A stretch of DNA of 64,000 nt from the NCBI GenBank assembly GCA_002269645.1, contig NIVC01000142.1, positions 124,001 through 188,000 on the forward strand, given 5' to 3'. Shown here in pieces: positions 1 to 63,870 of this stretch; position 1 is the stretch's first letter; every line of letters starts with the position of its first letter. The notes under the pieces were generated by a model. It was not told the DNA's origin, did not search any database, and saw only the letters and a list, made by a program, of their open reading frames with translations. This DNA comes from Macrostomum lignano (Eukaryota). The position numbers and the translations under genes were made by a program.

Positions 1-27902
<27,902 letters not shown>

Positions 27903-45734: not shown

Positions 45735-47750
45735 GTAGGGTAGGGGGAGAGGGAGAGGAGAGAAAGTAGAGTAGGGAGAGGGGGAGAGAGAGGAAGTAGA
45801 GTAGGGAGAAGGGGATGGGAGAGGAAGTAGAGTAGGGAGAAGGAGAGGAAGTAGAGTAGGGAGAAGGGGAGGGAGAGGAAGTAGAGTAGGGAGAGGGGGA
45901 GGGAGAGGAAGTAGAGTAGGGTGAAGAATAGGGAGAGGAAGTAGAGTAGGGTGAAGGATAGGGAGAGGAAGTAGAGTAGGGTGAAGGATAGGGAGAGGAA
46001 GTAGAGTAGGGTGAGAGAGAGAGAGAGGAAGTAGAGTAGGGTGAGGGAGAGAGAGAGGAAGTAGAGTAGGGTGAGGGAGAGAGAGAGGAAGTAAAGTAGG
46101 GTGAGGGAGAGAGAGAGAGGAAGTAGAGTAGGGTGAGGGAGAGAGAGAGAGGAAGTAGAGTAGGGTGAGAGAGAGAGCGAGAGAGGAAGTAGAGTAGGGT
46201 GAGGGAGAGAGAGAGGAAGTAGAGTAGGGTGAGGGAGAGAGAGAGAGGAAGTAGAGTAGGGTGAGGGAGAGAGAGAGGAAGTAGAGTAGGGTGAAGGATA
46301 GGGAGAGGAGGTAGAGTAGGGTGAAGGATAGGGAGAGGAGGTAGAGTAGGGTGAAGGATAGGGAGAGGAAGTAGAGTAGAGTGAAGGATAGGGAGAGGAG
46401 GTAGAGTAGGTTGAAGGATAGGGAGAGGAAGTAGAGTAGGGTGAAGGATAGCGAGAGGAAGTAGAGTAGAGTGAAGGATAGGGAGAGGAAGTAGAGTAGG
46501 GTGAAGGATAGGGAGAGGAAGTAGAGTAGGGTGAAGGATAGGGAGAGGAAGTAGAGTAGGGAGAAGGGGAGGGAGAGGAAGTAGAGTAGGGAGAGGGGGG
46601 GAGAGGAAGTAGAGTAGGGTGAGAGAGAGAGAGAGGAAGTAGAGTAGGGTGAGGGAGAGAGAGAGAGAGGAAGTAGAGTAGGGTGAGGGAGAGAGAGAGG
46701 AAGTAAAGTAGGGTGAGGGAGAGAGAGAGAGGAAGTAGAGTAGGGTGAGGGAGAGAGAGAGGAAGTAGAGTAGGGAGAAGGGGATGGGAGAGGAAGTAGA
46801 GTAGGGAGAAGGGGAGGGAGAGGAAGTAGAGTAGGGAGAGGGGGAGGGAGAGGAAGTAGAGTAGGGTGAAGAATAGGGAGAGAAAGTAGAGTAGGGTGAA
46901 GGATAGGGAGAGGAAGTAGAGTAGGGTGAAGGATAGGGAGAGGAAGTAGAGTAGGGTGAAGGATAGGGAGAGGAAGTAGAGTAGGGTGAGGGAGAGAGAG
47001 AGGAAGTAGAGTAGGGTGAGGGAGAGAGAGAGGAAGTAAAGTAGGGTGAGGGAGAGAGAGAGAGGAAGTAGAGTAGGGTGAGGGAGAGAGAGAGAGGAAG
47101 TAGAGTAGGGTGAGAGAGAGAGCGAGAGAGGAAGTAGAGTAGGGTGAGGGAGAGAGAGAGGAAGTAGAGTAGGGTGAGGGAGAGAGAGAGAGGAAGTAGA
47201 GTAGGGTGAGGGAGAGAGAGAGGAAGTAGAGTAGGGTGAAGGATAGGGAGAGGAGGTAGAGTAGGGTGAAGGATAGGGAGAGGAGGTAGAGTAGGGTGAA
47301 GGATAGGGAGAGGAAGTAGAGTAGGGAGAAGGGGAGGGAGAGGAAGTAGAGTAGGGAGAGGGGGAGGGAGAGGAAGTAGAGTAGGGTGAGAGAGAGAGAG
47401 GAAGTAGAGTAGGGTGAGGGAGAGAGAGAGAGAGGAAGTAGAGTAGGGTGAGGGAGAGAGAGAGGAAGTAAAGTAGGGTGAGGGAGAGAGAGAGAGGAAG
47501 TAGAGTAGGGTGAGGGAGAGAGAGAGGAAGTAGAGTAGGGTGAGGGAGAGAGAGAGGAAGTAGAGTAGGATGAGGGAGAGAGAGAGAGGAAGTAGAGTAG
47601 GGTGAGGGAGAGAGAGAGAGGAAGTAGAGTAGGGTGAGGGAGAGAGAGAGAGTAAGTAGAGTAGGGTGAGGGAAAGGGAGAGGAAGTAGAGTAGGGGAGA
47701 AGGATAGGGAGAGGAAGTAGAGTAGGGGAGAAGAGGAGAGGGGAGAGGAG
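45735..47750. repeat. About 30-bp purine-rich minisatellite (gaggaagtagagtagggtgaggga(ga)n), related to the 41-kb array
   Basis: Shared core gaggaagtagagtaggg; internal block duplication of about 950 bp. Confidence 0.94.
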
Positions 47751-48976: not shown

Positions 48977-51900
48977 TCCTGAAGGACTGGTGCTTGTGTT
49001 ATGGCTGTCTCCTGAAGGACTGGTGGTTGTGTTATGGCTGTCTCCTGAAGGACTGGTGGTTGTGTTATGGCTGTCTCCTGAAGGACTGGTGGTTGTGTTA
49101 TGGCTGTCTCCTGAAGGACTGGTGGTTGTGTTATGGCTGTCTCCTGAAGGACTGGTGGTTGTGTTATGGCTGTCTCCTGAAGGACTGGTGGTTGGGTTAT
49201 GGCTGTCTCCTGAAGGACTGGTGGTTGTGTTTTGGCTGTCTCCTGAAGGACTGGTGGTTGTGTTATGGCTGTCTCCTGAAGGACTGGTGGTTGTGTTATG
49301 GCTGTCTCCTGAAGGACTGGTGGTTGTGTTATGGCTGTCTCCTGAAGGACTGGTGGTTGGGTTATGGCTGTCTCCTGAAGGACTGGTGGTTGTGTTATGG
49401 CTGTCTCCTGAAGGACTGGTGGTTGTGTTATGGCTGTCTCCTGAAGGACTGGTGGTTGTGTTATGGCTGTCTCCTGAAGGACTGGTGGTTGTGTTATGGC
49501 TGTCTCCTGAAGGACTGGTGGTTGTGTTATGGCTGTCTCCTGAAGGACTGGTGGTTGTGTTATGGCTGTCTCCTGAAGGACTGGTGGTTGTGTTATGGCT
49601 GTCTCCTGAAGGACTGGTGGTTGGGTTATGGCTGTCTCCTGAAGGACTGGTGGTTGTGTTATGGCTGTCTCCTGAAGGACTGGTGGTTGTGTTTTGGCTG
49701 TCTCCTGAAGGACTGGTGGTTGTGTTATGGCTGTCTCCTGAAGGACTGGTGGTTGTGTTATGGCTGTCTCCTGAAGGACTGGTGGTTGTGTTATGGCTGT
49801 CTCCTGAAGGACTGGTGGTTGTGTTATGGCTGTCTCCTGAAGGACTGGTGGTTGGTTATGGCTGTCTCCTGAAGGACTGGTGGTTGTGTTATGGCTGTCT
49901 CCTGAAGGACTGGTGGTTGTGTTATGGCTGTCTCCTGAAGGACTGGTGGTTGTGTTATGGCTGTCTCCTGAAGGACTGGTGGTTGTGTTATGGCTGTCTC
50001 CTGAAGGACTGGTGGTTGGTTATGGCTGTCTCCTGAAGGACTGGTGGTTGTGTTATGGCTGTCTCCTGAAGGACTGGTGGTTGTGTTATGGCTGTCTCCT
50101 GAAGGACTGGTGGTTGTGTTATGGCTGTCTCCTGAAGGACTGGTGGTTGTGTTATGGCTGTCTCCTGAAGGACTGGTGGTTGTGTTATGGCTGTCTCCTG
50201 AAGGACTGGTGGTTGTGTTATGGCTGTCTCCTGAAGGACTGGTGGTTGTGTTATGGCTGTCTCCTGAAGGACTGGTGGTTGTGTTATGGCTGTCTCCTGA
50301 AGGACTGGTGGTTGTGTTATGGCTGTCTCCTGAAGGACTGGTGGTTGGGTTATGGCTGTCTCCTGAAGGACTGGTGGTTGTGTTATGGCTGTCTCCTGAA
50401 GGACTGGTGGTTGTGTTATGGCTGTCTCCTGAAGGACTGGTGGTTGTGTTATGGCTGTCTCCTGAAGGACTGGTGGTTGTGTTATGGCTGTCTCCTGAAG
50501 GACTGGTGCTTGTGTTATGGCTGTCTCCTGAAGGACTGGTGGTTGTGTTATGGCTGTCTCCTGAAGGACTGGTGGTTGTGTTATGGCTGTCTCCTGAAGG
50601 ACTGGTGGTTGTGTTATGGCTGTCTCCTGAAGGACTGGTGGTTGTGTTATGGCTGTCTCCTGAAGGACTGGTGGTTGTGTTATGGCTGTCTCCTGAAAGA
50701 CTGGTGGTTGTGTTATGGCTGTCTCCTGAAGGACTGGTGGTTGTGTTATGGCTGTCTCCTGAAGGACTGGTGGTTGTGTTATGGCTGTCTCCTGAAGGAC
50801 TGGTGGTTGTGTTATGGCTGTCTCCTGAAGGACTGGTGGTTGTGTTATGGCTGTCTCCTGAAGGACTGGTGGTTGTGTTATGGCTGTCTCCTGAAGGACT
50901 GGTGGTTGTGTTATGGCTGTCTCCTGAAGGACTGGTGGTTGTGTTATGGCTGTCTCCTGAAGGACTGGTGGTTGTGTTATGGCTGTCTCCTGAAGGACTG
51001 GTGGTTGTGTTATGGCTGTCTCCTGAAGGACTGGTGGTTGTGTTATGGCTGTCTCCTGAAGGACTGGTGGTTGTGTTATGGCTGTCTCCTGAAGGACTGG
51101 TGGTTGGTTATGGCTGTCTCCTGAAGGACTGGTGGTTGTGTTATGGCTGTCTCCTGAAGGACTGGTGGTTGTGTTATGGCTGTCTCCTGAAGGACTGGTG
51201 GTTGTGTTATGGCTGTCTCCTGAAGGACTGGTGGTTGTGTTATGGCTGTCTCCTGAAGGACTGGTGGTTGTGTTATGGCTGTCTCCTGAAGGACTGGTGG
51301 TTGGTTATGGCTGTCTCCTGAAGGACTGGTGGTTGTGTTTGGCTGTCTCCTGAAGGACTGGTGGTTGTGTTATGGCTGTCTCCTGAAGGACTGGTGGTTG
51401 TGTTATGGCTGTCTCCTGAAGGACTGGTGGTTGTGTTATGGCTGTCTCCTGAAGGACTGGTGGTTGTGTTATGGCTGTCTCCTGAAGGACTGGTGGTTGT
51501 GTTATGGCTGTCTCCTGAAGGACTGGTGGTTGTGTTATGGCTGTCTCCTGAAGGACTGGTGGTTGTGTTATGGCTGTCTCCTGAAGGACTGGTGGTTGTG
51601 TTATGGCTGTCTCCTGAAGGACTGGTGGTTGTGTTATGGCTGTCTCCTGAAGGACTGGTGGTTGTGTTATGGCTGTCTCCTGAAGGACTGGTGGTTGTGT
51701 TATGGCTGTCTCCTGAAGGACTGGTGGTTGTGTTATGGCTGTCTCCTGAAGGACTGGTGGTTGTGTTATGGCTGTCTCCTGAAGGACTGGTGGTTGTGTT
51801 ATGGCTGTCTCCTGAAGGACTGGTGGTTGTGTTATGGCTGTCTCCTGAAGGACTGGTGGTTGTGTTATGGCTGTCTCCTGAAGGACTGGTGGTTGTGTTA

Positions 51901-53700
51901 TGGCTGTCTCCTGAAGGACTGGTGGTTGTGTTATGGCTGTCTCCTGAAGGACTGGTGGTTGTGTTATGGCTGTCTCCTGAAGGACTGGTGGTTGTGTTAT
52001 GGCTGTCTCCTGAAGGACTGGTGGTTGTGTTATGGCTGTCTCCTGAAGGACTGGTGGTTGTGTTATGGCTGTCTCCTGAAGGACTGGTGGTTGTGTTATG
52101 GCTGTCTCCTGAAGGACTGGTGGTTGTGTTATGGCTGTCTCCTGAAGGACTGGTGGTTGTGTTATGGCTGTCTCCTGAAGGACTGGTGGTTGTGTTATGG
52201 CTGTCTCCTGAAGGACTGGTGGTTGTGTTATGGCTGTCTCCTGAAGGACTGGTGGTTGTGTTATGGCTGTCTCCTGAAGGACTGGTGGTTGTGTTATGGC
52301 TGTCTCCTGAAGGACTGGTGGTTGTGTTATGGCTGTCTCCTGAAGGACTGGTGGTTGTGTTATGGCTGTCTCCTGAAGGACTGGTGGTTGTGTTATGGCT
52401 GTCTCCTGAAGGACTGGTGGTTGTGTTATGGCTGTCTCCTGAAGGACTGGTGGTTGTGTTATGGCTGTCTCCTGAAGGACTGGTGGTTGGTTATGGCTGT
52501 CTCCTGAAGGACTGGTGGTTGTGTTATGGCTGTCTCCTGAAGGACTGGTGGTTGTGTTATGGCTGTCTCCTGAAGGACTGGTGGTTGTGTTATGGCTGTC
52601 TCCTGAAGGACTGGTGGTTGTGTTATGGCTGTCTCCTGAAGGACTGGTGGTTGTGTTATGGCTGTCTCCTGAAGGACTGGTGGTTGGTTATGGCTGTCTC
52701 CTGAAGGACTGGTGGTTGTGTTATGGCTGTCTCCTGAAGGACTGGTGGTTGTGTTATGGCTGTCTCCTGAAGGACTGGTGGTTGTGTTATGGCTGTCTCC
52801 TGAAGGACTGGTGGTTGTGTTATGGCTGTCTCCTGAAGGACTGGTGGTTGTGTTATGGCTGTCTCTTGAAGGACTGGTGGTTGTGTTATGGCTGTCTCCT
52901 GAAGGACTGGTGGTTGTGTTATGGCTGTCTCCTGAAGGACTGGTGGTTGTGTTATGGCTGTCTCCTGAAGGACTGGTGGTTGTGTTATGGCTGTCTCCTG
53001 AAGGACTGGTGGTTGGTTATGGCTGTCTCCTGAAGGACTGGTGGTTGTGTTATGGCTGTCTCCTGAAGGACTGGTGGTTGTGTTATGGCTGTCTCCTGAA
53101 GGACTGGTGGTTGTGTTATGGCTGTCTCCTGAAGGACTGGTGGTTGTGTTATGGCTGTCTCCTGAAGGACTGGTGGTTGTGTTATGGCTGTCTCCTGAAG
53201 GACTGGTGGTTGTGTTATGGCTGTCTCCTGAAGGACTGGTGGTTGTGTTATGGCTGTCTCCTGAAGGACTGGTGGTTGTGTTATGGCTGTCTCCTGAAGG
53301 ACTGGTGGTTGTGTTATGGCTGTCTCCTGAAGGACTGGTGGTTGGTTATGGCTGTCTCCTGAAGGACTGGTGGTTGTGTTATGGCTGTCTCCTGAAGGAC
53401 TGGTGGTTGTGTTATGGCTGTCTCCTGAAGGACTGGTGGTTGTGTTATGGCTGTCTCCTGAAGGACTGGTGGTTGTGTTATGGCTGTCTCCTGAAGGACT
53501 GGTGGTTGTGTTATGGCTGTCTCCTGAAGGACTGGTGGTTGTGTTATGGCTGTCTCCTGAAGGACTGGTGGTTGTGTTATGGCTGTCTCCTGAAGGACTG
53601 GTGGTTGTGTTATGGCTGTCTCCTGAAGGACTGGTGGTTGTGTTATGGCTGTCTCCTGAAGGACTGGTGGTTGTGTTATGGCTGTCTCCTGAAGGACTAT
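48977..53700. repeat. 33-bp minisatellite, about 143 highly homogeneous copies (ggtggttgtgttatggctgtctcctgaaggact)
   Basis: Direct; 4.7 kb with nine 32-bp units. Confidence 0.98.
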
Positions 53701-54649
53701 GGCTGTCTGCACTGCAATACTGCAGAAGGAGAACCACATTTTCCAGCTGGAGTTAAGAAATCGCTGCTTCTCAAATTCCGAAGCAGTCAGTGAGTCAGCA
53801 GCCCCTTTGCCCTATAGAACCTCACGGTCAGGCTAGAATCTTGCGGTCTTGAGCGCTTCCACCCCTCCGATTAAGTCAGGCCGGCCCCGACAAAGGAGAA
53901 CGCAATTGAATTACCACTCAGTGACGGGGGGGGGGTCATTTGCGACCCACTGCAGCACTGCTGCTCCGGGTCGGGAACAGAGTTCCTGAATGTGTCTTCT
54001 AGGAATTCCTGGAATTAATCCGATTTGCGCGACATTACAAACTAGTAGGTCGAACTTCTCTGCCCTTCTCTCCATCTTTCCCTTCTCAAATTCGTCTACA
54101 AAGTCCGAAACGCACTTCAAGATGCATCGGTCAAAACTTTTTTATTTGAAATTTCCTTCCTTCATCTTGGGAACACGCGAAAAAACTAGAAAAAATGGCT
54201 TAATCCCCAGAGCATAACGTTTCTTCCAAGTTCAAGACTCTTGGCTGAATTTCTATAAGTTGAGTATTGCGCAATGACGTGCTTAAGCAAGCGCGTCGTG
54301 AGCTCATCCAGATCCCTTAGTTATAATAAATCTGCAGGCCCCAGCTTCTTAAAAATGAAGCGGAACCTAATGCAGAAAGTGCTCGGTTCACTGACTGCCT
54401 TTATTACTGGCTGACTTGGCCCGCCAAGCCTTCTCGCTTTTCTTTCAAACTCAGTCAAAACCCTCCGCGCCTGGGATTAACGAGCGGCCAGGCATTAGAA
54501 AAAAAAACTTTGACATCGGGTGGCCAATCAGAGACGTGGAAGACTTGGGGGGGGTTTGGCACAGCGGGTCTGAGACCAAAAGCTTATTAGTGACCCCTGA
54601 TTCTGGGCCCTGACACTTGCGGAGCTGCAGCCAGCATTCGAGCACAAGG

Positions 54650-57600
54650 ATGAAGCCGGCAGACAGTCTTGGCGCTGCAGCCCCGACGGCGCACTGGTGC
54701 CTCACGCTGCTACTGGCTCTGTCCCTGGCCTTCCTGGCCTGGCGAACCGTCGTTATGGACGCTCAGATTCGGGCCATCGCTGAATCGTTGGACGCCGCCG
54801 CCGTCAATGCTTCATTGAGCGACGATGCCGGCCTTCACCTGTGGATCAGCGGCGGCTCCGCGCGTCCGCAGCTGCGGATGCGACGCAGTGTTGGCCGGCG
54901 AAGAGGTCTTCAAGACGGCGACGGCCGCTGGTTGGATGCCGTCAGCAGATTCAGGGTGAGACCGGGCAGCTCTGCTCGATCGGCTGGTGGCTGCGCCCTA
55001 GATTCTTAGAGTACACCAATGAGCCCTCCTAGATTATTATGGTACACCAAATGAGTCCTCCTAGATTCTTAGGGTACACCGATGAGTCCTCCTAGATTCT
55101 TAGAGTGCACCGATGAGCCCTCCTAGATTCTTAGAGTGCACCGATGAGTCCTCCTAGATTCTTAGGGTACACCGATGAGTCCTACTAGATTCTTAGAGTG
55201 CACCGATGAGTCCTCCTAGATTCTTAGGGTACACCGATGAGCCCTCCTAGATTCTAAGAGTACACCGATGAGCCCTCCTAGATTCTTAGGATACACCAAT
55301 GAGTCCTCCTAGATTCTTAGGATACACCAATGAGCCCTCCTAGATTCTTAGGATACACCAATGAGCCCTCCTAGATTCTTAGGATACACCGATGAGCCCT
55401 CCTAGATTCTTAGAGTACACTGATGAGCCCTCCTAGATTCTTAGGATACACCGATGAGCCCTCCTAGATTCTTAGGATACACCGATGAGTCCTACTAGAT
55501 TCTTAGAGTGCACCGATGAGTCCTCCTAGATTCTTAGGGTACACCGATGAGCCCTCCTAGATTCTAAGAGTACACCGATGAGCCCTCCTAGATTCTTAGG
55601 ATACACCAATGAGTCCTCCTAGATTCTTAGGATACACCAATGAGCCCTCCTAGATTCTTAGGATACACCGATGAGCCCTCCTAGATTCTTAGAGTACACT
55701 GATGAGCCCTCCTAGATTCTTAGGATACACCGATGAGCCCTCCTAGATTCTTAGGATACACCAATGAGCCCTCCTAGATTCTTAGAGTACACCGATGAGC
55801 CCTCCTAGATTCTTAGGGTACACCGATGAGCTTCCTAGATTCTTAGAGTGCACCGATGAGTCCTCCTAGATTCTTAGGGTACACCGATGAGCCCTCCTAG
55901 ATTCTTAGGGTACACCGATGAGTCCTCCTAGATTCTTAGAGTGCACCGATGAGTCCTCCTAGATTCTTAGAGTGCACCGATGAGTCCTCCTAGATTCTTA
56001 GAGTGCACCGATGAGCCCTAGCTTATTATGGTACACCAATGAGCCCTCCTAGATTCTTAGGGTACACCGATGAGCCCTCCTAGATTCTTAGGATACACCA
56101 ATGAGCCCTCCTAGATTCTTAGGGTACACCGATGAGCCCTCCTAGGTTCTTAGGATACACCGATGAGCCCTCCTAGATTCTTAGGGTACACCGATGAGTC
56201 CTCCTAGATTCTTAGAGTACACCGATGAGCCCTCCTAGATTCTTAGGGTACACCGATGAGCCCTCCTAGATTCTTAGGGTACACCGATGAGTCCTCCTAG
56301 ATTCTTAGAGTGCACCGATGAGTCCTCCTAGATTCTTAGAGTGCACCGATGAGCCCTAGCTTATTATGGTACACCAATGAGCCCTCCTAGATTCTTAGGG
56401 TACACCGATGAGCCCTCCTAGATTCTTAGGATACACCAATGAGCCCTCCTAGATTCTTAGGGTACACCAATGAGACCTCCTAGATTCTTAGGGTACACCG
56501 ATGAGTCCTCCTAGATTCTTAGAGTACACCGATGAGCCCTCCTAGATTCTTAGGGTACACCGATGAGCCCTCCTAGATTCTTAGGGTACACCGATGAGTC
56601 CTCCTAGATTCTTAGAGTGCACCGATGAGTCCTCCTAGATTCTTAGAGTGCACCGATGAGCCCTAGCTTATTATGGTACACCAATGAGCCCTCCTAGATT
56701 CTTAGGATACACCAATGAGCCCTCCTAGATTCTTAGGATACACCGATGAGCCCTCCTAGATTCTTAGGATACACCAATGAGCCCTCCTAGATTCTTAGGG
56801 TACACCAATGAGACCTCCTAGATTCTTAGGGTACACCGATGAGCCCTCCTAGATTCTTAGGATACACCGATGAGCCCTCCTAGATTCTTAGGGTACACCG
56901 ATGAGCCCTCCTAGATTCTTAGGGTACACCGATGAGTCCTCCTAGATTCTTAGGGTACACCGATGAGTCCTCCTAGATTCTTAGGGTACACCGATGAGTC
57001 CTCCTAGATTCTTAGGGTACACCGATGAGTCCTCCTAGATTCTTAGGGTACACCGATGAGTCCTCCTAGATTCTTAGAGTACACCGATGAGCCCTCCTAG
57101 ATTCTTAGGGTACACCGATGAGCCCTACTAGATTCTTAGGGTACACCGATGAGCCCTCCTAGATTCTTAGGGTACACCGATGAGCCCTACTAGATTCTTA
57201 GGGTACACCGATGAGCCCTACTAGATGCAATGCGAAGTTAAGTGTCTTGCTCAAGGACACAAATTGTGTCCAAGAATAAAACAATAATATAAACTGAAAT
57301 TCTGTTTTGTCGATTAGCAGCAGTGCTTATCAAAGCTTCAACTGACTGGCGATTGCGCAATCAATCAGCTGCAGCTTCGTTGCAGCTTGCTCAGTTGGTC
57401 GTAAAAAAGGGACTGATTGATTAAAGATTTTAGCGCATTGACTGAAAAGAGTTCAAAGAAAATGACTCAACAGTCTGAATGAAAAAGTTGCAGAAAGTGG
57501 AAATATTCCTTTATTTAGATTGGAAAAAATATTTACCTTTTAATATACAACGTGCAGAAAAACATGGTGCTACTGTGAACAGGTAGAACAGGTGCAGTAG

Positions 57601-60600
57601 TGCTAAGGACAGGTAGAACAGGTGAAGTAGTGCTAAGGACAGGTAGAACAGGTGAAGTAGTGCTAAGGACAGGTAGAACAGGTGCAGTAGTGATAAGCAC
57701 CGGTAGATCAGGTGGAGTAGTGCTATGGACAGGTAGAACAGGTGCAGTAGTGCTATGGACAGGTAGAACAGGTGCAGTAGTGCTAAGGACAGGTAGAACA
57801 GGTGCAGTAGTGATAAGCACCGGTAGATCAGGTGGAGTAGTGCTATGGACAGGTAGAACAGGTGCAGTAGTGCTAAGGACAGGTAGAACAGGTGCAGTAG
57901 TGATAAGCACCGGTAGATCAGGTGGAGTAGTGCTATGGACAGGTAGAACAGGTGCAGTAGTGCTAAGGACAGGTAGAACAGGTGCAGTAGTGCTAAGGAC
58001 AGGTAGAACAGGTGCAGTAGTGCTAAGGACAGGTAGAACAGGTGCAGTAGTGCTGTGGACCGGTAGAACAGGTGCAGTAGTGCTATAGACCGGTAGAACA
58101 GGTGCAGTAGTGCTATGGACAGGTAGAACAGGTGCAGTAGTGCTAAGGACAGGTAGAACAGGTGAAGTAGTGCTAAGGACAGGTAGAACAGGTGCAGTAG
58201 TGCTAAGGACAGGTAGAACAGGTGCAGTAGTGCTATGGACCGGTATAACAGGTGCAGTCGTGCTATGGACCGGTAGAACAGGTGCAGTAGTGATATGGAC
58301 CGGTAGAACAGGTGCAGTCGTGCTATGGACCGGTAGAACAGGTGCAGTAGTGCTATGGACCGGTATAACAGGTGGAGTAGTGCTATGGACCGGTAGAACA
58401 GGTGCAGTAGTGATATGGACCGGTAGAACAGGTGCAGTAGTGCTATGGACCGGTAGAACAGGTGCAGTCGTGCTATGGACCGGTATAACAGGTGGAGTAG
58501 TGCTATGAACAGGTAGAACAGGTGCACCAGAAGATGAAGCAAGATCGAAGAGTAGAAGGCTGTGTGCCTGGATAGAAGCGCCAAAGCTACCAAAACTTTA
58601 AGTTACCAAAAGGAGCTTTCAGAGCAAGGTTATTTAAGCCGTCAAGCTTAACTATTCTACTCAACACCTTCCTCATTTGCGAGTCCAATGCATCAATTTT
58701 GCCGCCTCATCAACCCTGTTTAAAAATGCCCAGATGCTCGTGTCGTTGCTAACGAGACTAAGCCTCTCTCCACTTACTCGAGGGAAGGTTTGGAGCAAAG
58801 ACAGAGATTAACCTTCCTGAGCCAATGGCTTAACCAAACCAAAACCTACTATTATAGTGGGGAGGGCAACGGACATCAAGGTGTTGAAGAGGCGATGGGG
58901 CTAGCAACAAAAAAGGTTTGGAAGAATAAGCTGCTAAATAAACGAAGCACTCTGAGCGTAAAAAAAAGGCAGCCAAAACTGCCAATACCGCAGCTTCCCA
59001 ATTTTGCATTCAAGGGCGGAGCACTTGACAGCACGGCCCTCTTCAACTGAAAACTCGGGAATCTCCCCAGTTTCCTGAACTTGATCCCAATGGCAGGGGA
59101 AGCTGAATAAGTTTATTCCCGCCCGCCATCAGGCGGCTGCGTGCGGAAGCGCCGATCTGAGAGCTGGCCACTTGTGCAGACGGCAGAGCGGGGTTGAGGA
59201 CAGGGAACCAATATTCAGCGCCATGTGGCAAGGGCATTCTAGAGTTTCCAATCGCTATTCAACAGCCCAAGGTGGAGATTTCCTTCACATTCTTTAGTTC
59301 TGAGCGTATAGCGTCAAGCATTTCCAACAAGCCGGCTGCAATGCAAACTGAAGCTTTTAGGACTTTTTATGATGGCTGATAAACTACGCTCATAAACTTG
59401 TTCATAGTTTACAATATGGCTCGCTAACAATGCCCAGGTTGCCGACTTGAAGTCCATCTGTGTTGCCGTGTCCGAGGCCTGCGCTGTGAAGCACCGGGCC
59501 CGCAGTGCGAGGAATTCTAAGCGTGAGGACTTTTTGAATGTTTTGCTTGTCGAGATTCAAATTGCTCCGACCCAGCCCTTCAAACCCAGCCCTTCAAACT
59601 CAGCCCTTCAAACCCAGCCCTTCAAACCCAGCCCTTCAAACCCAGCCCTTTAAACCCAGCCCTTCAAACTTAGCCCTTCAAACCCAGCCCTTCAAACCCA
59701 ACCCCTCAAACCCAATCCCTCAAACCCAATCCCTCAAACCCAATCCCTCAAACCCAACCCCTCAAACCCAATCCCTCAAACCCAACCCCTCAAACCCAAT
59801 CCCTCAAACCCAATCCCTCAAACCCAACCCCTCAAACCCAATCCCTCAAACCCAATCCCTCAAACCCAACCCCTCAAACCCAATCCCTCAAACCCAACCC
59901 CTCAAACCCAACCCCTCAAACCCAACCCCTCAAACTCACCCCTTCAAACCCGAAATTTCAAACCCAACCCCTTAAACCCAACCCCTCAACCACAAACCCT
60001 CAAACCCAATCTTTCAAACTCAACCCCTTAAACCGAACCCCTCAAACTCATATCCTCAAACCCAATCCCTCAAACCCAACCCCTCAAACCCAACCCCTCA
60101 AACCCAACTCCTCAAACCCAACTCCTCAACCACAAACCCTCAAACCCAATCTTTCAAACTCAACCCCTTAAACCCAACCGCTCAAACTTATCGCTCTCAA
60201 GCCAATTCCCTCAAGCCAAAACCTCAAAACCGCTAAGGTCTTTCACTTAAAGATAGACGAGAACCCGATTTGGCCTGACGAAAGAGACCCGAATCTCTTT
60301 CCAGCGAAGTCAACCACCCAATCCGCTGCTTTGGGCCGCCCTGGGCCGCCCGGACCAAAGGGCGACAAAGGCGACAAAGGCGACATGGGCGAGCGCGGTC
60401 TGCTCGGCCCCATCGGGCTGCCCGGCAAGATGGGACCCCGAGGCGTCCAAGGTCCCAAAGGCGAACCGGGCGACTCTTTCAGACCAAGTGAGCCGCCTGG
60501 CTTGTTTTTTTATCGTAAAAACTCGCAAAGAATCCTAACCAATTGATGCTCAATTTACTCGTAAACCCATTTTTAACCTATTTCAGGCAACATGAAGTGT

Positions 60601-62046
60601 AGAGTTGACTACCAGGGCGAGACCGTGTGCAGCTACAGGGATTCCAACAACAATCTGGTTAACATGCGGAGCCGGGGAGAGAAGCAGTGGCAGCCAGAGC
60701 CCTGGTGTCCTTGTAAGTGGCATTGAGAAATGCTGTGTTACTTGTATTGCGGTGGGTGTGGATTGGGGTGGGTGTGGATTGGGGTGGGTGTGGATTGGGG
60801 TGGGTGTGGATTGGGGTGGGTGTGGATTGGGGTGGGTGTAGATTGGGGTGGGTGTGGATTGAGGTGGGTGTGGATTGGGATGGGTGTGGATTGGGGTGGG
60901 TGTGGATTGGGGTGGGTGTGGATTGGGGTGGGTGTTGATTGGGGTGGGTGTGGATTGGGGTGGGTGTGGAATGGGGTGAGCTCTGCTGAATGCGTTTTGG
61001 GTGTGGATGGATTGGTGTCACCATGGGGTGTTATAATACAACCCAGTATATCTAATAGTATCGCATATTAATTTCTCATTAACCGTATCTGTGTTTATTC
61101 TTCCACCAATCGCAGGCCAAAAAGGCGAGCCGGGCGACCGAGGCCTGGTCGGGCTACGCGGCGAGAAAGGCGAGCCGGGGGTGTGCAACAGGGCCTGCTT
61201 TAACGGTGAGACAGGAATTTCGCTGCTTGAATTTATGGCTTTTTAAAGATTCAAGAAATCGTTGTAAGGGATTTCAAGAGACGAAATCGCATACAGGCTA
61301 TTACAAACTTACAGGCTGTTACAGACTTACAGGCTATTACAGGTTTACAGGCTAGTACAGACTTACAGGCTATTACGGACTTACAGGCTATTACAGACTT
61401 ACAGGCTATTACAGACTTACAGGCTATTACAGACTTACAGGCTATTACAGACTTACAGGCTTACAGACTCTATGGGGTTACAGACTTACAGGCTTAGACT
61501 ATTGGACTTAATAATAATAAATAATTGAATACACCTGCCCTAATGGGCAGACGTGCAACCGACAGCTCAGCCGCAGCTATTGCGCGGCGCATCTGAAGGC
61601 TGCGTACGGCTGTTCAGTCCAAGGACTGGGGGGTCGCCACACACAGCCTCAATTACCCCAGCTAATGCTGGCACCCATTTTACAGCTGGGTGAGCTGAAG
61701 CAATGCAGAGTTACGTGTCTTGCTCAAGGACGCAAATTGTTCCAGCGGGATCGGGAATCGAACCCCCGGCCCCCGACCTTCAAGTCATGGTCCGATGCTC
61801 TAACCACTGGGCTAAAACCCTCTTGTATATGGGCTTACAGACTACAAGCTCTTGCAGAATTCCAGCGCTTAAAGACAAGGAGCTCTTACAGACTACTAAA
61901 AATAGTATCTAAAATGGATTTAATGCGCTGCACTCATTGCAGAGCCGCCGGTCCAGCCATCAAAGACCAACGGGTCCCCCGGGCTGACCAACTGCAGCTA
62001 CGCTTCTTTGCTAATCCTCCTGCAGCTCTGCTTTTTAGCCATCTGA
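54650..62046 (+). CDS. Small membrane collagen, about 286 aa: N-terminal TM/signal anchor, furin site, two Gly-X-Y segments, C-terminal hydrophobic GPI-like tail; join(54650-54955,60253-60487,60587-60712,61116-61205,61943-62046)
   Basis: Exon 1 has [20 protein letters not shown]|S and donor AGG|gtgaga. Exon 2 has 16 Gly-X-Y triplets (GRP...GDS) and exon 4 has 7. Phases 0,1,1,1 are consistent. The last exon is [34 protein letters not shown], with AATAAA at 62223. The exon 2 acceptor is the least certain junction. Confidence 0.75.
54998..57225. repeat. 31-bp minisatellite (gatgagccctcctagattcttagggtacacc), collagen intron 1
   Basis: Tandem copies with recurring variant blocks. Confidence 0.96.
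57227..57266 (-). mobile_element. Fragment of the same CORE-SINE family
   Basis: gcaatgcgaagttaagtgtcttgctcaaggacacaaattg matches the CORE segment of the 61.7-kb copy at 36 of 40 positions. Confidence 0.7.
57575..58527. repeat. 30-bp minisatellite (gtgcagtagtgctaaggacaggtagaacag)
   Basis: Tandem copies. Confidence 0.95.
59570..60230. repeat. 14-bp minisatellite (aaacccagcccttc / aaacccaatccctc)
   Basis: Tandem copies. Confidence 0.92.
60749..60968. repeat. 16-bp G-rich minisatellite (ggattggggtgggtgt)
   Basis: Tandem copies in collagen intron 3. Confidence 0.94.
61288..61500. repeat. 18-bp minisatellite (acaggctattacagactt)
   Basis: Tandem copies in collagen intron 4. Confidence 0.9.
61509..61820 (-). 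mobile_element. tRNA-derived SINE with CORE (MIR-like) central domain
   Basis: On the minus strand: box A TAGCCCAGTGGTTAG, box B GGTTCGATTCCC, then gcgtccttgagcaagacacgtaac...cagctgtaaaatggg, resembling the MIR CORE (gtgaccttgggcaagtcacttaac...catctgtaaaatggg), and a (TTA)n tail. Confidence 0.75.
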
Positions 62047-62445
62047 GACAGCCGCCCCGCCTCAGCCTACCTGGGAGCACGCCCGATGTCCCACTCGTCA
62101 AATCATCATCCTCGAGTTTGTCTAAGTTCATTTTTAGCAGTAGCAAATCAACTAAAAATAATTTGCTCTATACTCGCTACTCATGCTACTGATAGTAGAG
62201 TTAGTAGGGGGATTGTGTATCGAATAAAAAACTAAATCATAATTTTAAATGTTTTTGTTACTCTAGCATGCCTTAAGAAGCCGCGTTATCAAAGTTCTGT
62301 TGAAATTCGTATTCATTAACCAATGAATGTTTTGCATAATAAACGGCTTTATTCACATTCTAATTTTACTCAAATTTTCACGATTGAATAAAACCAAATC
62401 AGAATGATCTATTTATATTTGTATTTGTATTAGAGTGAGTACATA

Positions 62446-62782
62446 GAGTCACACCAGAGTCACACCAGAGTCACACCCAAGTCACACCAGAGTCACACCA
62501 GAGTCACACCAGAGTCACACCCAAGTCACACCAGAGACACACCAGAGCCACACCAGAGTCACACCAGAGTCACACCCAAGTCACACCAGAGACACACCAG
62601 AGTCACACCAGAGTCACAACAGAGTCACACGAGAGTCACACCAGAGCCACACCAGAGCCACACCAGAGTACACCAGAGTCACACCAGTGTCACACGAGAG
62701 TCACACCAGAGTCACAAAAGTCATACCGGAGTCACCTAATTCACACCAGAGTCACTTAAGTCACACCAGAGTCACACCAGAG
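62446..62782. repeat. 11-bp minisatellite (gagtcacacca)
   Basis: Tandem copies. Confidence 0.92.
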
Positions 62783-62879
62783 AAGATGTGACTCCGTGGA
62801 ATATTCTCTTTTAGATAATCTGATCAGAATTAATACTCCTGTTTTGCATGCACCTACGCCGTACCAGCGCGGTGCCTAT

Positions 62880-63098
62880 GGGGCCGTAGCCCAGTGGTCT
62901 AACGCGGGCCTTTTTGTGCCTGCGGCCCAGGCTCGATTCCAAGTGCAGTCAAATTAATTTGAGGACTAGATTGGACTCTCGGCTTGGCTCTGCTCGTGCA
63001 ATCGAGGGCCACCCCTCCCCCCCCCCCAAGGCACAGTGAAGTGTACATGCCTAACGATAAATAAAGTTAGGGCTGTACACTCCTGTGTGAGTGTGTGC
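62880..63098 (+). mobile_element. tRNA-derived SINE-like element (second family)
   Basis: Box A TAGCCCAGTGG at 62887 and box B GGCTCGATTCC at 62930. There is no proper acceptor stem, and a non-tRNA body with a simple TG tail follows. Confidence 0.55.
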
Positions 63099-63107
63099 CT
63101 GTGCGTA

Positions 63108-63275
63108 TGACCAAGACCAGTCACCCCGGCCAATCACCCCGGCCAGTCACCCCGGCCAGTCACCTCGGCCAGTCAACCAGTCACTCAGGCCAGTCACCCC
63201 GGCCAGTCACCTCGGCCAGTCAACCAGTCACTCAGGCCAGTCACCCCGGCCAGTCACCTCGACCAATCACCCTCA
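63108..63275. repeat. 13-bp minisatellite (ccggccagtcacc), directly 3' of the DEG/ENaC stop codon
   Basis: Tandem copies abutting the stop codon. Confidence 0.9.
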
Positions 63276-63870
63276 GTCGGCCACCCCGCCAGCGTCAAAC
63301 TTTTGAACGCGGCCAGCAGCCGTAGCTGCCGCAGTCACCGCAGCCGCAGCAGGTGGCGCCTCTCCGCTGTCGCCGGCGCCATCAGAGCAGCCAAGCAGTC
63401 TCTTAAACAGGTAATAAATAAACTCGAGCAGCTCCACCGAAGTGATGACAGTCAGGCCTCCCCACAGAGAGAATGAGCCGCCGATCTGTGAGATCAACGC
63501 CTCCAGGGTGATCTGCAGTTTCTCCCGGGTCACCGTTCGGGCAAAATCCGGCCGGAACACCCGCAGCCGAAGGAAATTATCCCTGATGAGGTTGCCCTCC
63601 TCCGACTGCAGCAGGTCGGCGGCCTTGGCGGCCTGGCCGCTCTGCACGAGGCTGTCCAATCGGCTGTACACGCTGAACTTGCCAGCCAGCATGGAGTTGT
63701 TGCGCACTCTTAGCCTGTAGAAGTCCAGCTCGTTAGTTTTCGGCGGCCACAAAGATTGATAGGCGGTGCTTTTGAACGCCAGTGAGTGACAGGAGGCCGG
63801 GCAAGCGACGCCCGAGTCGCTAGCGATGAGGTTGCGCGGGTCCAGCTCCTGCTTCGAGGCGCAGTCATAG
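63273..63870 (-). CDS. DEG/ENaC (ASIC/FaNaC/ENaC family) channel, terminal exon with TM2; 5' exons lie beyond the window
   Basis: Acceptor ctacccgcag|C; ACPASCHS...QSLWP, IRDNFLRLRVF, then TM2 LISQIGGSFSLWGGLTVITSVELLEFIY, which aligns to ASIC LLGDIGGQMGLFIGASILT and alpha-ENaC LLSNLGSQWSLWFGSSVLS. Confidence 0.93.

What the first reader, a model, noticed from the sequence alone, without database searches (positions are those of the whole stretch)
54650..62046. Collagen apparently anchored at both ends (TM + furin site + Gly-X-Y + GPI-like tail)
Seen in the sequence: the phase-consistent splice model gives a short cytoplasmic N-terminus, one hydrophobic helix ([16 protein letters not shown]), a heptad-like neck ([17 protein letters not shown]) and RMRR|S. 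Two collagen segments follow (16 and 7 triplets), then a last exon ending [26 protein letters not shown], i.e. small residues plus a terminal hydrophobic stretch with no cytoplasmic tail. Established: type II TM + furin + collagen is the layout of MACITs (collagen XIII/XXIII/XXV), gliomedin/colmedins and EDA, which end in a short NC, olfactomedin or TNF domain, not a GPI signal. N-terminal TM plus C-terminal GPI is the tetherin/BST2 topology. Inference: this may be a membrane-to-membrane collagen tether that furin converts into a GPI-anchored trimer, or a GPI-collagen with a cleaved pro-domain.
Basis: partly seen in the sequence, partly recalled or inferred. Interest (0 to 1): 0.75.

Follow-up and report, generated by a model that had tools for sequence, protein, structure and literature searches.

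The report
Unannotated flatworm collagen with GPI-like tail
This stretch of the flatworm Macrostomum lignano genome holds an unannotated, apparently species-restricted gene for a very short collagen. It starts with a membrane-targeting helix and ends in a textbook-looking lipid-anchor (GPI) signal, which would be an unusual way to hold a collagen on a cell, but this rests on sequence analysis alone.

Summary
The window is Macrostomum lignano (Mlig_3_7, NIVC01000142.1).

The gene is not in the public proteomes. Its non-collagen parts have no detectable homologue among 1.8 to 5.8 billion proteins.

The best acceptor, TTCCAG|CG at 60305, is out of phase with exon 1. A missed 85-nt exon (59438-59522) restores the phase exactly. 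It carries the only GT[GA]AG donor in the 5.3-kb gap and is a GC-rich island with GC3 of 0.75. The resulting 6-exon, 297-aa model uses only canonical M. lignano splice motifs.

The product layout:
- An N-terminal hydrophobic helix, which could be a signal anchor or a cleavable signal peptide.
- An RMRR site in a predicted disordered loop, and a second site, RSAR.
- Two short triple helices (16 and 7 triplets) bracketed by cysteine pairs.
- A C-terminus that fits the GPI rules: NGS, an 8-residue spacer and a 14-residue hydrophobic end.

The last exon has coding-like GC3 (0.79) and is followed by poly(A) signals.

The most likely reading is a pre-pro short collagen whose mature form is GPI-anchored. 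Double anchoring is possible but unproven. It is not a member of MACIT, cuticle-collagen, EDA or colmedin. No transcript or conservation evidence was obtainable.

The parts
54524..54528 (+). CCAAT motif about 125 nt upstream of the ATG. It is a possible core-promoter element. A CTGCAG, the spliced-leader (SL) type acceptor motif, lies at 54625-54630.
   Evidence: motif positions. The motif definition [T/C]TNCAG comes from PMC8629364. Function is inferred only.
54650..54955 (+). Exon 1 (306 nt, phase 0), aa 1-102. It holds the start codon, a short N-terminus, the hydrophobic helix, the helical neck, the RMRR site and a second helix.
   Evidence: donor AGG|GTGAGA scores 8.4, far above the alternatives; only such candidate first exon in 53800-60300; in-frame codon log-odds +0.15 against -0.19 and -0.28; helices at residues 11-66 and 88-101.
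54695..54742 (+). Hydrophobic core [16 protein letters not shown] (aa 16-31). It could be a signal anchor (type II TM) or the h-region of a cleavable signal peptide.
   Evidence: Kyte-Doolittle. Hessa-scale sum of -2.3 for 15 residues and about +0.2 for 19; part of an uninterrupted helix with pLDDT 81-95.
54875..54886 (+). RMRR (aa 76-79), matching the R-X-[K/R]-R proprotein-convertase consensus, followed by S.
   Evidence: motif; lies in the only low-confidence, non-helical stretch, residues 67-87. The consensus is from PMC10538796 and PMC4678570.
54997..58526 (.). Intron 1 minisatellites: a 31-mer x72 (54997-57226) and a 30-mer x31.6 (57579-58526).
59438..59522 (+). Newly proposed exon 1b (85 nt, phase 0 to 1), encoding [28 protein letters not shown](P). 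It adds a Cys-x6-Cys pair and a second RxxR (RSAR, aa 124-127).
   Evidence: It has the only GT[GA]AG donor in 54960-60300. Its acceptor is cccag| preceded by CTAAC. It is 61% GC in 38% GC flanks, with GC3 of 0.75. Its length is 1 mod 3, which exactly reconciles exon 1 with the best acceptor at 60305.
60305..60487 (+). Exon 2 (183 nt, phase 1-1) with acceptor TTCCAG|CG. It contains COL1 = 16 Gly-X-Y triplets (60334-60477, aa 141-188).
Evidence: Pfam PF01391 E=2e-12. Acceptor motif per PMC8629364.
60587..60712 (+). Exon 3 (126 nt, phase 1-1): the non-collagenous NC2 region with four Cys, ending in ...WCPC.
   Evidence: GC3 0.76, P=0.006. Codon log-odds +0.39. No homologue and no PDB match.
61116..61205 (+). 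Exon 4 (90 nt, phase 1-1): COL2 = 7 triplets (61124-61186, aa 237-257), followed by the C-x3-C motif (GVCNRAC).
61943..62046 (+). Exon 5, coding part (stop at 62044-62046): [34 protein letters not shown]. The candidate omega triplet NGS is at 61969-61977. The hydrophobic tail is at 62002-62043.
   Evidence: Acceptor TTGCAG| fits the M. lignano motif. GC3 is 0.79 against 0.48 and 0.48 (P=0.012), with 0.40 GC and no periodicity just upstream. The tail filter is passed by no other terminal ORF in the window.
62223..62228 (+). First AATAAA, 177 nt after the stop codon; further ones are at 62338 and 62387. This is the probable 3' end of the transcript, convergent with the ASC channel gene on the minus strand.
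   Evidence: ASC exon at 63273-63752.

Best explanation
This is a real but unannotated, lineage-restricted Macrostomum lignano gene of six exons (54650-62046, 297 aa). It encodes a membrane-associated 'pre-pro' short collagen.

The proposed mechanism has four steps:
1. The N-terminal hydrophobic helix targets the chain to the ER with the N-terminus in the cytosol. It acts either as an uncleaved type II signal anchor or as a cleaved signal peptide.
2. The amphipathic helix that continues from it, together with the cysteine pairs, brings three chains together. Two short triple helices form, about 14 nm and about 6 nm long, separated by a Cys-rich hinge.
3. The C-terminal 25 residues are exchanged for a GPI anchor at about Asn273.
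4. A furin/PCSK-type convertase cuts at RMRR79 and/or RSAR127 in the secretory pathway and removes the N-terminal part.

The mature product would then be a GPI-anchored collagen trimer standing on the cell surface. If the N-terminal helix is not cleaved by signal peptidase, the precursor is briefly held at both ends in the same membrane, as in tetherin.

Shown directly: the sequence features, the exon structure by splice and phase logic, and the coding-like composition. Inferred: expression, trimerisation, cleavage and GPI attachment.
For: Organism and locus: the neighbouring TTL gene is 100% identical to M. lignano BOX15_Mlig029260g2 on NIVC01000142.1.

Gene structure:
- All five donors are GT[GA]AG and all five acceptors are CAG, as in M. 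lignano (PMC8629364).
- Exons 2-4 are symmetric phase 1-1.
- The gene has 5 introns averaging about 1.3 kb, matching the genome averages (PMC5730564).
- Exon 1b is needed to restore the frame.
- The ORF is intact across 6 exons, with GC3 of 0.68-0.79, like the neighbouring genes at 0.74-0.83. Introns, the UTR and the read-through after exon 4 are at 0.29-0.50.

Product:
- Pfam Collagen E=2e-12.
- Exon 1 is the only candidate leader exon.
- AF2 gives a helix at 11-66, then a disordered loop carrying RMRR.
- The C-terminus meets the omega, spacer and tail rules and is unique among about 2400 terminal ORFs.
- AATAAA lies 177 nt downstream of the stop.

Precedent: PCSK cleavage of TM or signal-peptide collagens is established for MACITs and nematode cuticle collagens (PMC4678570, PMC10538796).
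Against: - There is no transcript evidence.
- The gene is absent from the NCBI and UniProt M. lignano proteomes. This is weak evidence, because the GenBank set excludes transcripts overlapping repeats (PMC5730564) and a clear GPCR nearby is also unannotated.
- Exon 1 has no homologue among 1.84 billion representatives. Exons 3-5 have none in the word-indexed 5.8 billion. No conservation therefore supports either hydrophobic end.
- The exon 5 acceptor is only average by a crude score, and alternatives exist.
- The exon 1b evidence is circumstantial; a chance fit has a probability of roughly 0.1.
- GPI, signal-peptide and furin calls are rule-of-thumb only. No dedicated predictor was available.
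- RX[KR]R has about a 20% chance of occurring in so Arg-rich an exon (my estimate).
Confidence: 0.45

Rival explanations
1. It is a secreted or matrix pre-pro-collagen in the style of nematode cuticle collagens. The N-terminal segment is a signal peptide or anchor removed by processing, and the protein is released. The hydrophobic C-terminus is not a GPI signal. Either the transcript ends by read-through after exon 4 (...[16 protein letters not shown]), or the tail is a propeptide.
For: - The size (about 300 aa), the RxxR sites, and short interrupted Gly-X-Y blocks bracketed by Cys, including a CPC motif, match the cuticle-collagen layout (PMC10538796).
- Read-through after exon 4 stops after 16 codons, with AATAAA at 61516.
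- The exon 5 acceptor is only average.
Against: - The exon 4 donor ACG|GTGAGA is canonical.
- The read-through has GC3 of 0.31, which looks non-coding, whereas exon 5 has GC3 of 0.79 in exactly the frame imposed by phase 1.
- The GPI-like tail is not a pattern that random ORFs in this window produce.
- Pfam Col_cuticle_N does not match, even at E<=1.
Confidence: 0.22
2. It is a stably doubly anchored collagen. The N-terminal helix stays as a type II TM anchor, the C-terminus receives GPI, and convertase cleavage is inefficient or regulated. The trimer then lies along one membrane, or bridges two, like tetherin.
For: - The helix at 11-66 has no Gly or Pro break and no obvious c-region.
- The N-flank is slightly more positive than the C-flank (sequence).
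- 117 of 173 C. elegans cuticle collagens are predicted type II TM (PMC10538796).
- The GPI-type tail.
Against: - The core is only 16 residues. SLA|F and ALS|L satisfy the (-3,-1) rule, so signal-peptidase cleavage is plausible.
- RMRR sits in an exposed loop, so the N-terminal anchor would probably be cut off.
- Nothing supports bridging between membranes.
Confidence: 0.18
3. It is a non-functional or unexpressed locus. The collagen exons would be a decaying or never-fixed gene copy in a recently duplicated, repeat-rich genome, and the two hydrophobic ends come from stitching ORFs together.
For: - It is unannotated in all public proteomes searched.
- It is an orphan outside the Gly-X-Y repeats.
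- Its introns are swollen by minisatellites.
- Without exon 1b, the best donor and best acceptor are out of phase.
Against: - There is no stop or frameshift in 894 nt across six exons.
- The splice sites are canonical.
- GC3 enrichment is exon-specific and stops at the exon borders.
- The end features are improbable by the background tests.
- Non-annotation is explained by the repeat filter (PMC5730564).
Confidence: 0.12
4. It is a shorter mRNA made by spliced-leader trans-splicing onto the exon 2 acceptor (TTCCAG at 60305, or 60310). This mRNA would lack exon 1 and so lack the ER-targeting helix.
For: - About 21% of M. lignano genes are SL trans-spliced at [T/C]TNCAG, and the SL ends in ATG (PMC8629364).
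- TTCCAG at 60299-60304 fits the motif.
Against: - At 60305 the SL ATG is out of frame with the collagen.
- A collagen without ER entry could not be hydroxylated or disulfide-bonded.
- Upstream cis donors exist at 54956 and 59523, which favours cis-splicing.
Confidence: 0.03

Closest known systems
MACIT collagens (vertebrate XIII/XXIII/XXV, C. elegans COL-99)
   Same: N-terminal hydrophobic anchor, a juxtamembrane helical region, a furin-type site in the first non-collagenous domain, interrupted triple helices, and cysteines at the NC borders (PMC4678570).
   Different: MACITs are about 600-700 aa with three or more COL domains. They have an extremely conserved C-terminal COL/NC region ending W(H/N/Q)K or WKP/WCS/WRP, and no C-terminal hydrophobic tail. 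Here there are 297 aa, two COL domains, a GPI-type tail, and no sequence similarity outside Gly-X-Y.
Nematode cuticle collagens (e.g. SQT-3, DPY-17)
   Same: About 300 aa, with a predicted type II TM or signal peptide, an N-terminal RxxR cleaved by BLI-4, and short Gly-X-Y blocks bracketed by Cys clusters (PMC10538796). The layout is the closest match overall.
   Different: A different phylum. The Pfam Col_cuticle_N domain is absent. There are far fewer triplets (23 against about 50). Cuticle collagens have no GPI-type tail, and flatworms have no collagenous cuticle (own knowledge).
Ectodysplasin-A, gliomedin/colmedins and MARCO/class A scavenger receptors
   Same: Type II TM, a short collagen stalk and, in EDA and gliomedin, furin shedding. 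MARCO proteins were among the database hits.
   Different: All of these end in a globular ligand-binding domain (TNF, olfactomedin or SRCR), and none is present here. Similarity to MARCO is confined to Gly-X-Y.
Tetherin/BST2 topology
   Same: N-terminal TM, an extended rod-like oligomeric ectodomain and a C-terminal GPI anchor (own knowledge). This applies only if the N-terminal helix stays uncleaved.
   Different: Tetherin is a dimeric coiled coil, not a collagen, with no homology. Here a convertase site would sever the N-terminal anchor.
Fungal GPI-linked collagen-like protein MCL1 (Metarhizium)
   Same: A collagen-like Gly-X-Y domain combined with a C-terminal GPI-type attachment signal. 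This rests on my own knowledge of Wang & St Leger 2006. The papers I could search describe MCL1 as a collagen-like hyphal coat, but I did not see a GPI statement about MCL1 in them.
   Different: It is a fungal cell-wall protein with no TM or furin module, and is unrelated in sequence. I found no animal collagen described as GPI-anchored (0 papers).

Membership tests
Collagen triple-helix repeat proteins (Pfam PF01391) | Uninterrupted Gly-X-Y repeats scoring above the Pfam gathering threshold | tested here: met
   47.1 bits against a cutoff of 27.2, E=2e-12; 16 + 7 perfect triplets, with Pro in the X and Y positions.
MACIT | Type II orientation: a cytosolic N-terminus and one uncleaved TM helix | tested here: inconclusive
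   16-residue core. The Hessa sum is about 0 for 19-21 residues. The helix is continuous with no break. (-3,-1) sites exist, however. SignalP and DeepTMHMM were not available.
MACIT | Juxtamembrane NC1 coiled coil with a furin site | tested here: inconclusive
   RMRR is present in a disordered loop and the helix extends to residue 66. Only about 2 clean heptads (M36, I40, I43, L47) are visible. MARCOIL and ProP were not available.
MACIT | Three or more COL domains and about 600-700 aa | tested here: not met
   Two COL domains, 297 aa.
MACIT | Highly conserved C-terminal COL/NC region with two Cys, ending W(H/N/Q)K or WKP/WCS/WRP (PMC4678570) | tested here: not met
   The C-terminus is ...[12 protein letters not shown]...CFLAI. 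No word-sharing homologue for exons 3-5, and no MACIT among the hits.
Nematode cuticle collagen | Col_cuticle_N domain (PF01484) | tested here: not met
   no match, even at E<=1.
Nematode cuticle collagen | N-terminal RxxR site, Cys clusters flanking the Gly-X-Y blocks, about 300 aa | tested here: met
   RMRR76, RSAR124; Cys110/117, 196/206/232/234 and 257/261; 297 aa. This is a resemblance in layout only.
Ectodysplasin / colmedin / class A scavenger receptor | C-terminal TNF, olfactomedin or SRCR domain | tested here: not met
   no such Pfam domain. Only 40 residues follow COL2.
GPI-anchored proteins | N-terminal ER-targeting sequence | tested here: met
   a hydrophobic N-terminal segment, either signal peptide or anchor.
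GPI-anchored proteins | C-terminal signal: small omega/omega+2 residues, a 5-10 residue polar spacer, and a 12-20 residue hydrophobic end with no cytosolic tail | tested here: met
   N273-G-S, spacer PGLTNCSY (8 residues), tail [14 protein letters not shown] (14 residues, mean KD 2.6, no charges). Too short and weak for a TM helix (Hessa -0.85 over 15 residues). Rule-based only.
GPI-anchored proteins | Positive call by a trained predictor (NetGPI, PredGPI, big-PI) and biochemical release by PI-PLC | not testable with these tools
   No such predictor or experiment was available.
Tetherin-like double anchor | Both the TM and the GPI retained on the mature protein | not testable with these tools
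   This depends on signal-peptidase and convertase processing, which needs experiment.

The most novel reading that the evidence does not exclude
This would be the first animal collagen carrying a GPI anchor. It would be made as a tetherin-like precursor tied to the membrane at both ends, by a type II TM helix and a GPI anchor. A proprotein convertase would then convert it into a GPI-anchored triple-helical rod, giving a new way to attach collagen to a cell surface.
Probability: 0.2. Interest if true: 0.7.

Novelty: new variant of a known kind. Interest (0 to 1): 0.45.

Why it matters
All described membrane collagens of animals are held by an N-terminal transmembrane helix and shed by furin. 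I found no description of a GPI-anchored animal collagen.

If the C-terminal signal works, this gene would add a second way to anchor collagen. A lipid-anchored triple helix could be released by phospholipase, sorted to rafts or apical membranes, and would be oriented C-terminus-in, the opposite of MACITs.

M. lignano has working transgenesis, RNAi and in situ methods (PMC5730564), so the idea is directly testable.

There are practical points too:
- The public GenBank annotation of Mlig_3_7 misses intact genes whose introns are full of tandem repeats.
- Reading a 'phase-consistent' model by eye can skip a small exon.

The claim stays modest. It concerns one orphan gene in one polyploid genome, supported in silico only.

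Tried and rejected
1. Homology searches.
- The full 267-aa model returned only generic Gly-X-Y hits: phage tail fibres, otolin/C1q and MARCO.
- Exons 3-5 returned no candidate at all.
- HMMER of exon 1 against 1.84 billion representatives returned only three spurious hits to translated tandem repeats.
- Exact look-ups of the model, the GPCR and the TTL ORF were not in the collection.
- PDB sequence searches of the non-collagen parts found nothing beyond collagen peptides.

2. Splice models.
Both need AAG acceptors while a TTCCAG acceptor sits at 60305.
- The alternative exon 1 donor at 54987 (CTG|GTGGCT, phase 1) was rejected as weak.

3. Family assignments.
- MACIT, cuticle-collagen, EDA, colmedin and MARCO membership were all rejected on tested features.

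4. Structure prediction.
- Only the contiguous exon 1 product was folded. It was a single sequence, so confidence is modest.

5. Small RNAs.
- tRNA and Rfam scans of 54-64 kb were empty.

6. Synteny.
- Walking to a homeologous copy was not possible. Flanks are limited to 10 kb, and the collagen gene lies 21 kb from the only annotated anchor.

7. Literature.
- Searches for a GPI-anchored collagen returned nothing.

Full report
**Where the window comes from.** A 478-aa ORF at 31492-32925 is 100% identical to 'hypothetical protein BOX15_Mlig029260g2 [Macrostomum lignano]'. That protein is encoded on GCA_002269645.1 (assembly Mlig_3_7), contig NIVC01000142.1, at 155031-157594. Mapping its exons onto the window gives an offset of 124000, so the window is NIVC01000142.1:124001-188000 and the finding lies at about 178650-186046. 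M. lignano is a free-living flatworm. Its genome is more than half repetitive, with 15% simple and tandem repeats. It averages about 5 introns per gene with a mean length of 1.1-1.4 kb, and it has recent large duplications (PMC5730564).

**Checking the observation.**
- The ATG at 54650 has A at -3 and a CCAAT motif 125 nt upstream.
- The exon runs to a strong donor, AGG|GTGAGA. It scores 8.4 in a crude matrix; no other GT in the exon exceeds 3.9.
- It encodes a 15-residue N-terminus, [16 protein letters not shown], then [17 protein letters not shown]..., RMRR|S and GRRRG.
- The only Gly-X-Y runs of five or more triplets in all six frames of the 64-kb window are 60334-60477 (16 triplets) and 61124-61186 (7 triplets).
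- Pfam Collagen matches at E=2e-12.
- The last exon (61943-62046) ends [26 protein letters not shown].

**Is it chance?**
- In 53800-60300, exon 1 is the only ATG-started open frame that combines a hydrophobic N-terminus with a good donor.
- Window-wide, 2 of 63 ATG..GT[GA]AG candidates have such a segment.
- I built a rule filter for a GPI-type end: no charge in the last 14 residues, mean Kyte-Doolittle of at least 2.0, and a small omega/omega+2 pair 19-30 residues from the end.
- The filter was designed after seeing the tail. Applied to every CAG-started terminal ORF of 28-150 aa on both strands, it is passed by 2 of 2393, and both are this exon.

**The splice model needs one correction.**
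- M. lignano cis donors are GT[G/A]AG, cis acceptors are CAG, and spliced-leader acceptors are [T/C]TNCAG (PMC8629364). The four introns of the neighbouring TTL gene show the same pattern, with ttcag, ttccag and tttcag acceptors.
- The best acceptor in front of the first collagen exon is ctctTTCCAG|CG at 60305, 25 nt after a CTGAC branch-point-like motif. It needs one base from the preceding exon, whereas exon 1 ends in phase 0.
- I searched the 5.3-kb gap for CAG...GT[GA]AG intervals that are open in phase 0 and have a length of 1 mod 3. The gap holds exactly one GT[GA]AG donor (59523), and one interval fits: 59438-59522, 85 nt.
- This interval is a 61% GC island in 38% GC flanks, with GC3 of 0.75. 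Its acceptor, cccag|G, is the first AG after a CTAAC motif. Of the eight CAGs within 400 nt upstream of the donor, it is the only one that is open and in the right phase.
- By my estimate a chance fit has a probability of about 0.1, so this is good circumstantial evidence rather than proof.

**The resulting six-exon model.**
- Exons: E1 54650-54955, E1b 59438-59522, E2 60305-60487, E3 60587-60712, E4 61116-61205, E5 61943-62046.
- It uses only GT[GA]AG donors and CAG acceptors.
- E2, E3 and E4 become symmetric phase 1-1 exons.
- It has five introns with a mean of 1.3 kb and encodes 297 aa.
- Exon 1b adds [28 protein letters not shown](P): a Cys-x6-Cys pair and a second RxxR (RSAR) 13 residues before COL1.

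**Is it coding?**
- GC-rich genes in this window have GC3 of 0.74-0.83 (GPCR, Ig and ASC exons).
- The collagen gene's exons have GC3 of 0.72, 0.75, 0.68, 0.76, 0.79 and 0.79.
- Introns, the 3' region and the 16-codon read-through after exon 4 have 0.29-0.50.
- For exon 5 the enrichment is frame-specific: 0.48/0.48/0.79, P=0.012 for the frame fixed in advance by the phase-1 junction. It begins at the acceptor; the 100 nt upstream are 40% GC with no periodicity.
- In-frame codon log-odds, trained on about 1700 neighbouring codons, are highest in the proposed frame for E1, E2, E3 and E4. They are neutral for E5.
- AATAAA follows the stop at +177, +292 and +341 nt, in the AT-rich gap shared with the convergent ASC channel gene.

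**Protein anatomy (297-aa numbering).**
- Hydrophobic core at 16-31.
- N53-A-S sequon.
- RMRR at 76-79 and RSAR at 124-127.
- Cys110 and Cys117.
- COL1 at 141-188, with Pro in X five times and in Y four times, many KGD/KGE pairs and one GER.
- NC2 at 189-236, with Cys196, 206, 232 and 234 (WCPC).
- COL2 at 237-257, then C257-x3-C261.
- N273-G-S, the spacer PGLTNCSY, and the tail [14 protein letters not shown] (284-297).
- Each helix is therefore bracketed by cysteine pairs, and the ectodomain has eight of them.
- At 0.286 nm per residue the helices would be about 14 nm and about 6 nm long (established geometry).

**The two hydrophobic ends.**
- AlphaFold2 on the contiguous exon 1 product gives one uninterrupted helix at 11-66, with pLDDT 81-95 over residues 11-40. 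It then gives a low-confidence coil at 67-87 that contains RMRR and GRRRG, and a helix at 88-101. This was a single sequence with mean pLDDT of 70.
- This fits a TM helix running into a neck, with an exposed convertase site.
- The lack of any Gly or Pro break after the core argues mildly for a signal anchor.
- Against that, the core is only 16 residues, and the unweighted Hessa sum is about -2.3 for 15 and about +0.2 to +0.4 for 19-21 residues. S25-L-A27|F and A23-L-S25|L also satisfy the (-3,-1) rule.
- In C. elegans, members of one family, the cuticle collagens, split into 56 with predicted signal peptides and 117 with predicted type II anchors (PMC10538796). I therefore treat signal peptide versus anchor as undecided.
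- The heptad claim is weak. Only M36, I40, I43 and L47 form a clean a/d series.
- The C-terminal tail is 14-15 residues with a Gln in the middle, and a Hessa sum of -0.85 over 15. That is too short for a membrane span, but it has the length and character of a GPI signal. N-G-S sits 25 residues from the end with an 8-residue spacer.
- All of this is rule-based. SignalP, DeepTMHMM, NetGPI and ProP were not available.

**Relatives.**
- There are none outside the triple helix. The full protein finds only generic collagen repeats.
- The alignment to MARCO, the only type II collagen among the hits, is pure Gly-X-Y.
- Exons 3-5 share no words with any of 5.8 billion clustered proteins.
- Exon 1 has only three spurious hits among 1.84 billion representatives.
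- PDB has nothing.
- The gene is therefore also missing from the NCBI and UniProt M. lignano proteomes that are in those collections.
- This is weak evidence against expression. The GenBank annotation is a transcript-derived 'coregenes' set from which transcripts overlapping repeat annotations were removed (PMC5730564). Four of this gene's five introns carry large minisatellites. An intact intronless rhodopsin-type GPCR at 36633-38045 is likewise unannotated.

**Interpretation.**
- The best-supported reading (about 0.45) is a real, lineage-restricted pre-pro short collagen. It would enter the ER through its N-terminal helix, trimerise, receive GPI near N273, and lose its N-terminal part to a furin/PCSK-type enzyme, leaving a GPI-anchored collagen rod.
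- A persistent double anchor (about 0.18) requires that signal peptidase does not cut and that the convertase is inefficient.
- Even then, both anchors would be made in one bilayer.
- A secreted collagen of the cuticle-collagen type, with a different or non-GPI C-terminus (about 0.22), is the main rival.
- A dead or silent locus (about 0.12) and an SL-trans-spliced short form (about 0.03) are less likely.

**Comparison with known families.**
- It works most like nematode cuticle collagens and MACITs: an N-terminal anchor or signal, an RxxR site, and interrupted helices with Cys knots.
- Membership fails for each family tested. There is no Col_cuticle_N domain, no conserved MACIT C-terminus or three-COL architecture, and no TNF, olfactomedin or SRCR domain.
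- A GPI-type end on a collagen has, to my knowledge, a precedent only in the fungal wall protein MCL1.
- Full-text searches found no paper describing a GPI-anchored collagen.

**Verdict.** I rate it a new variant of a known kind. Interest is moderate (0.45) because everything beyond the sequence features is inference from a single genome.

Noticed in passing
window 54997-57226, 57579-58526, 59570-60187, 60746-60978, 61292-61494, 62445-62782, 63117-63272: Four of the gene's five introns carry their own, unrelated minisatellites: units of 31, 30, 14, 16 and 18 nt, with 11 to 72 copies. Intron 1 carries two of them; the 99-nt intron 2 carries none. Two more arrays, with 11- and 13-nt units, lie in the gap to the next gene. 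Exons are small GC-rich islands between the arrays.
   Followed up: partly
window 48977-53698 and 45745-47741: A 4.7-kb array of a 33-nt unit (143 copies, 99% identical) and a 2-kb array of a purine-rich 30-nt unit lie just upstream of the gene. They cause the extreme GC and AT skew of this part of the window and produce long artefactual ORFs.
   Followed up: partly
window 57244-57262 and 61717-61735 (element about 61540-61830); also 62870-62960: The same dispersed-repeat core (GTCTTGCTCAAGGACRCAA) occurs in introns 1 and 4. The intron 4 copy continues into a tRNA-like sequence on the minus strand, and a second tRNA-like stretch lies at about 62880-62950. These are probably tRNA-derived SINE fragments. 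ARAGORN and Rfam call nothing there.
   Followed up: partly
window 36633-38045 (-): An intact, intronless 470-aa rhodopsin-family GPCR ORF (Pfam 7tm_1, E=3e-13). It is neither in the protein collection nor called on the GenBank record.
   Followed up: partly
window 63273-63752 (-), continuing beyond 64000: The last exon of an amiloride-sensitive sodium channel (ASC/DEG-ENaC) gene, convergent with the collagen gene. The two stop codons are about 1.2 kb apart, and the single minus-strand poly(A) signal (TTTATT at 62348) lies among the collagen gene's own AATAAA signals.
   Followed up: no
window 54625-54630: A CTGCAG matching the M. lignano spliced-leader acceptor motif lies 20 nt upstream of the start codon. 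If it were used, the ATG at the end of the spliced leader would open an out-of-frame upstream ORF.
   Followed up: no
window about 27797-27902 (-): The only other ATG..GT[GA]AG candidate first exon in the window with a signal-peptide-like hydrophobic stretch (MPSTAVLLALTSSS...LLVVLLAVTICC). It may be the leader exon of the Ig-domain gene on the minus strand.
   Followed up: no
window 31031-33591 (+); 3114-3968 and 4595-4960 (-): A tubulin-tyrosine-ligase-like gene (BOX15_Mlig029260g2) with short introns of about 76-157 nt and a 95%-identical homeologue in UniProt. There are also Ig-domain exons of a 680-aa annotated gene. Both were used here only as splice and codon references.
   Followed up: partly
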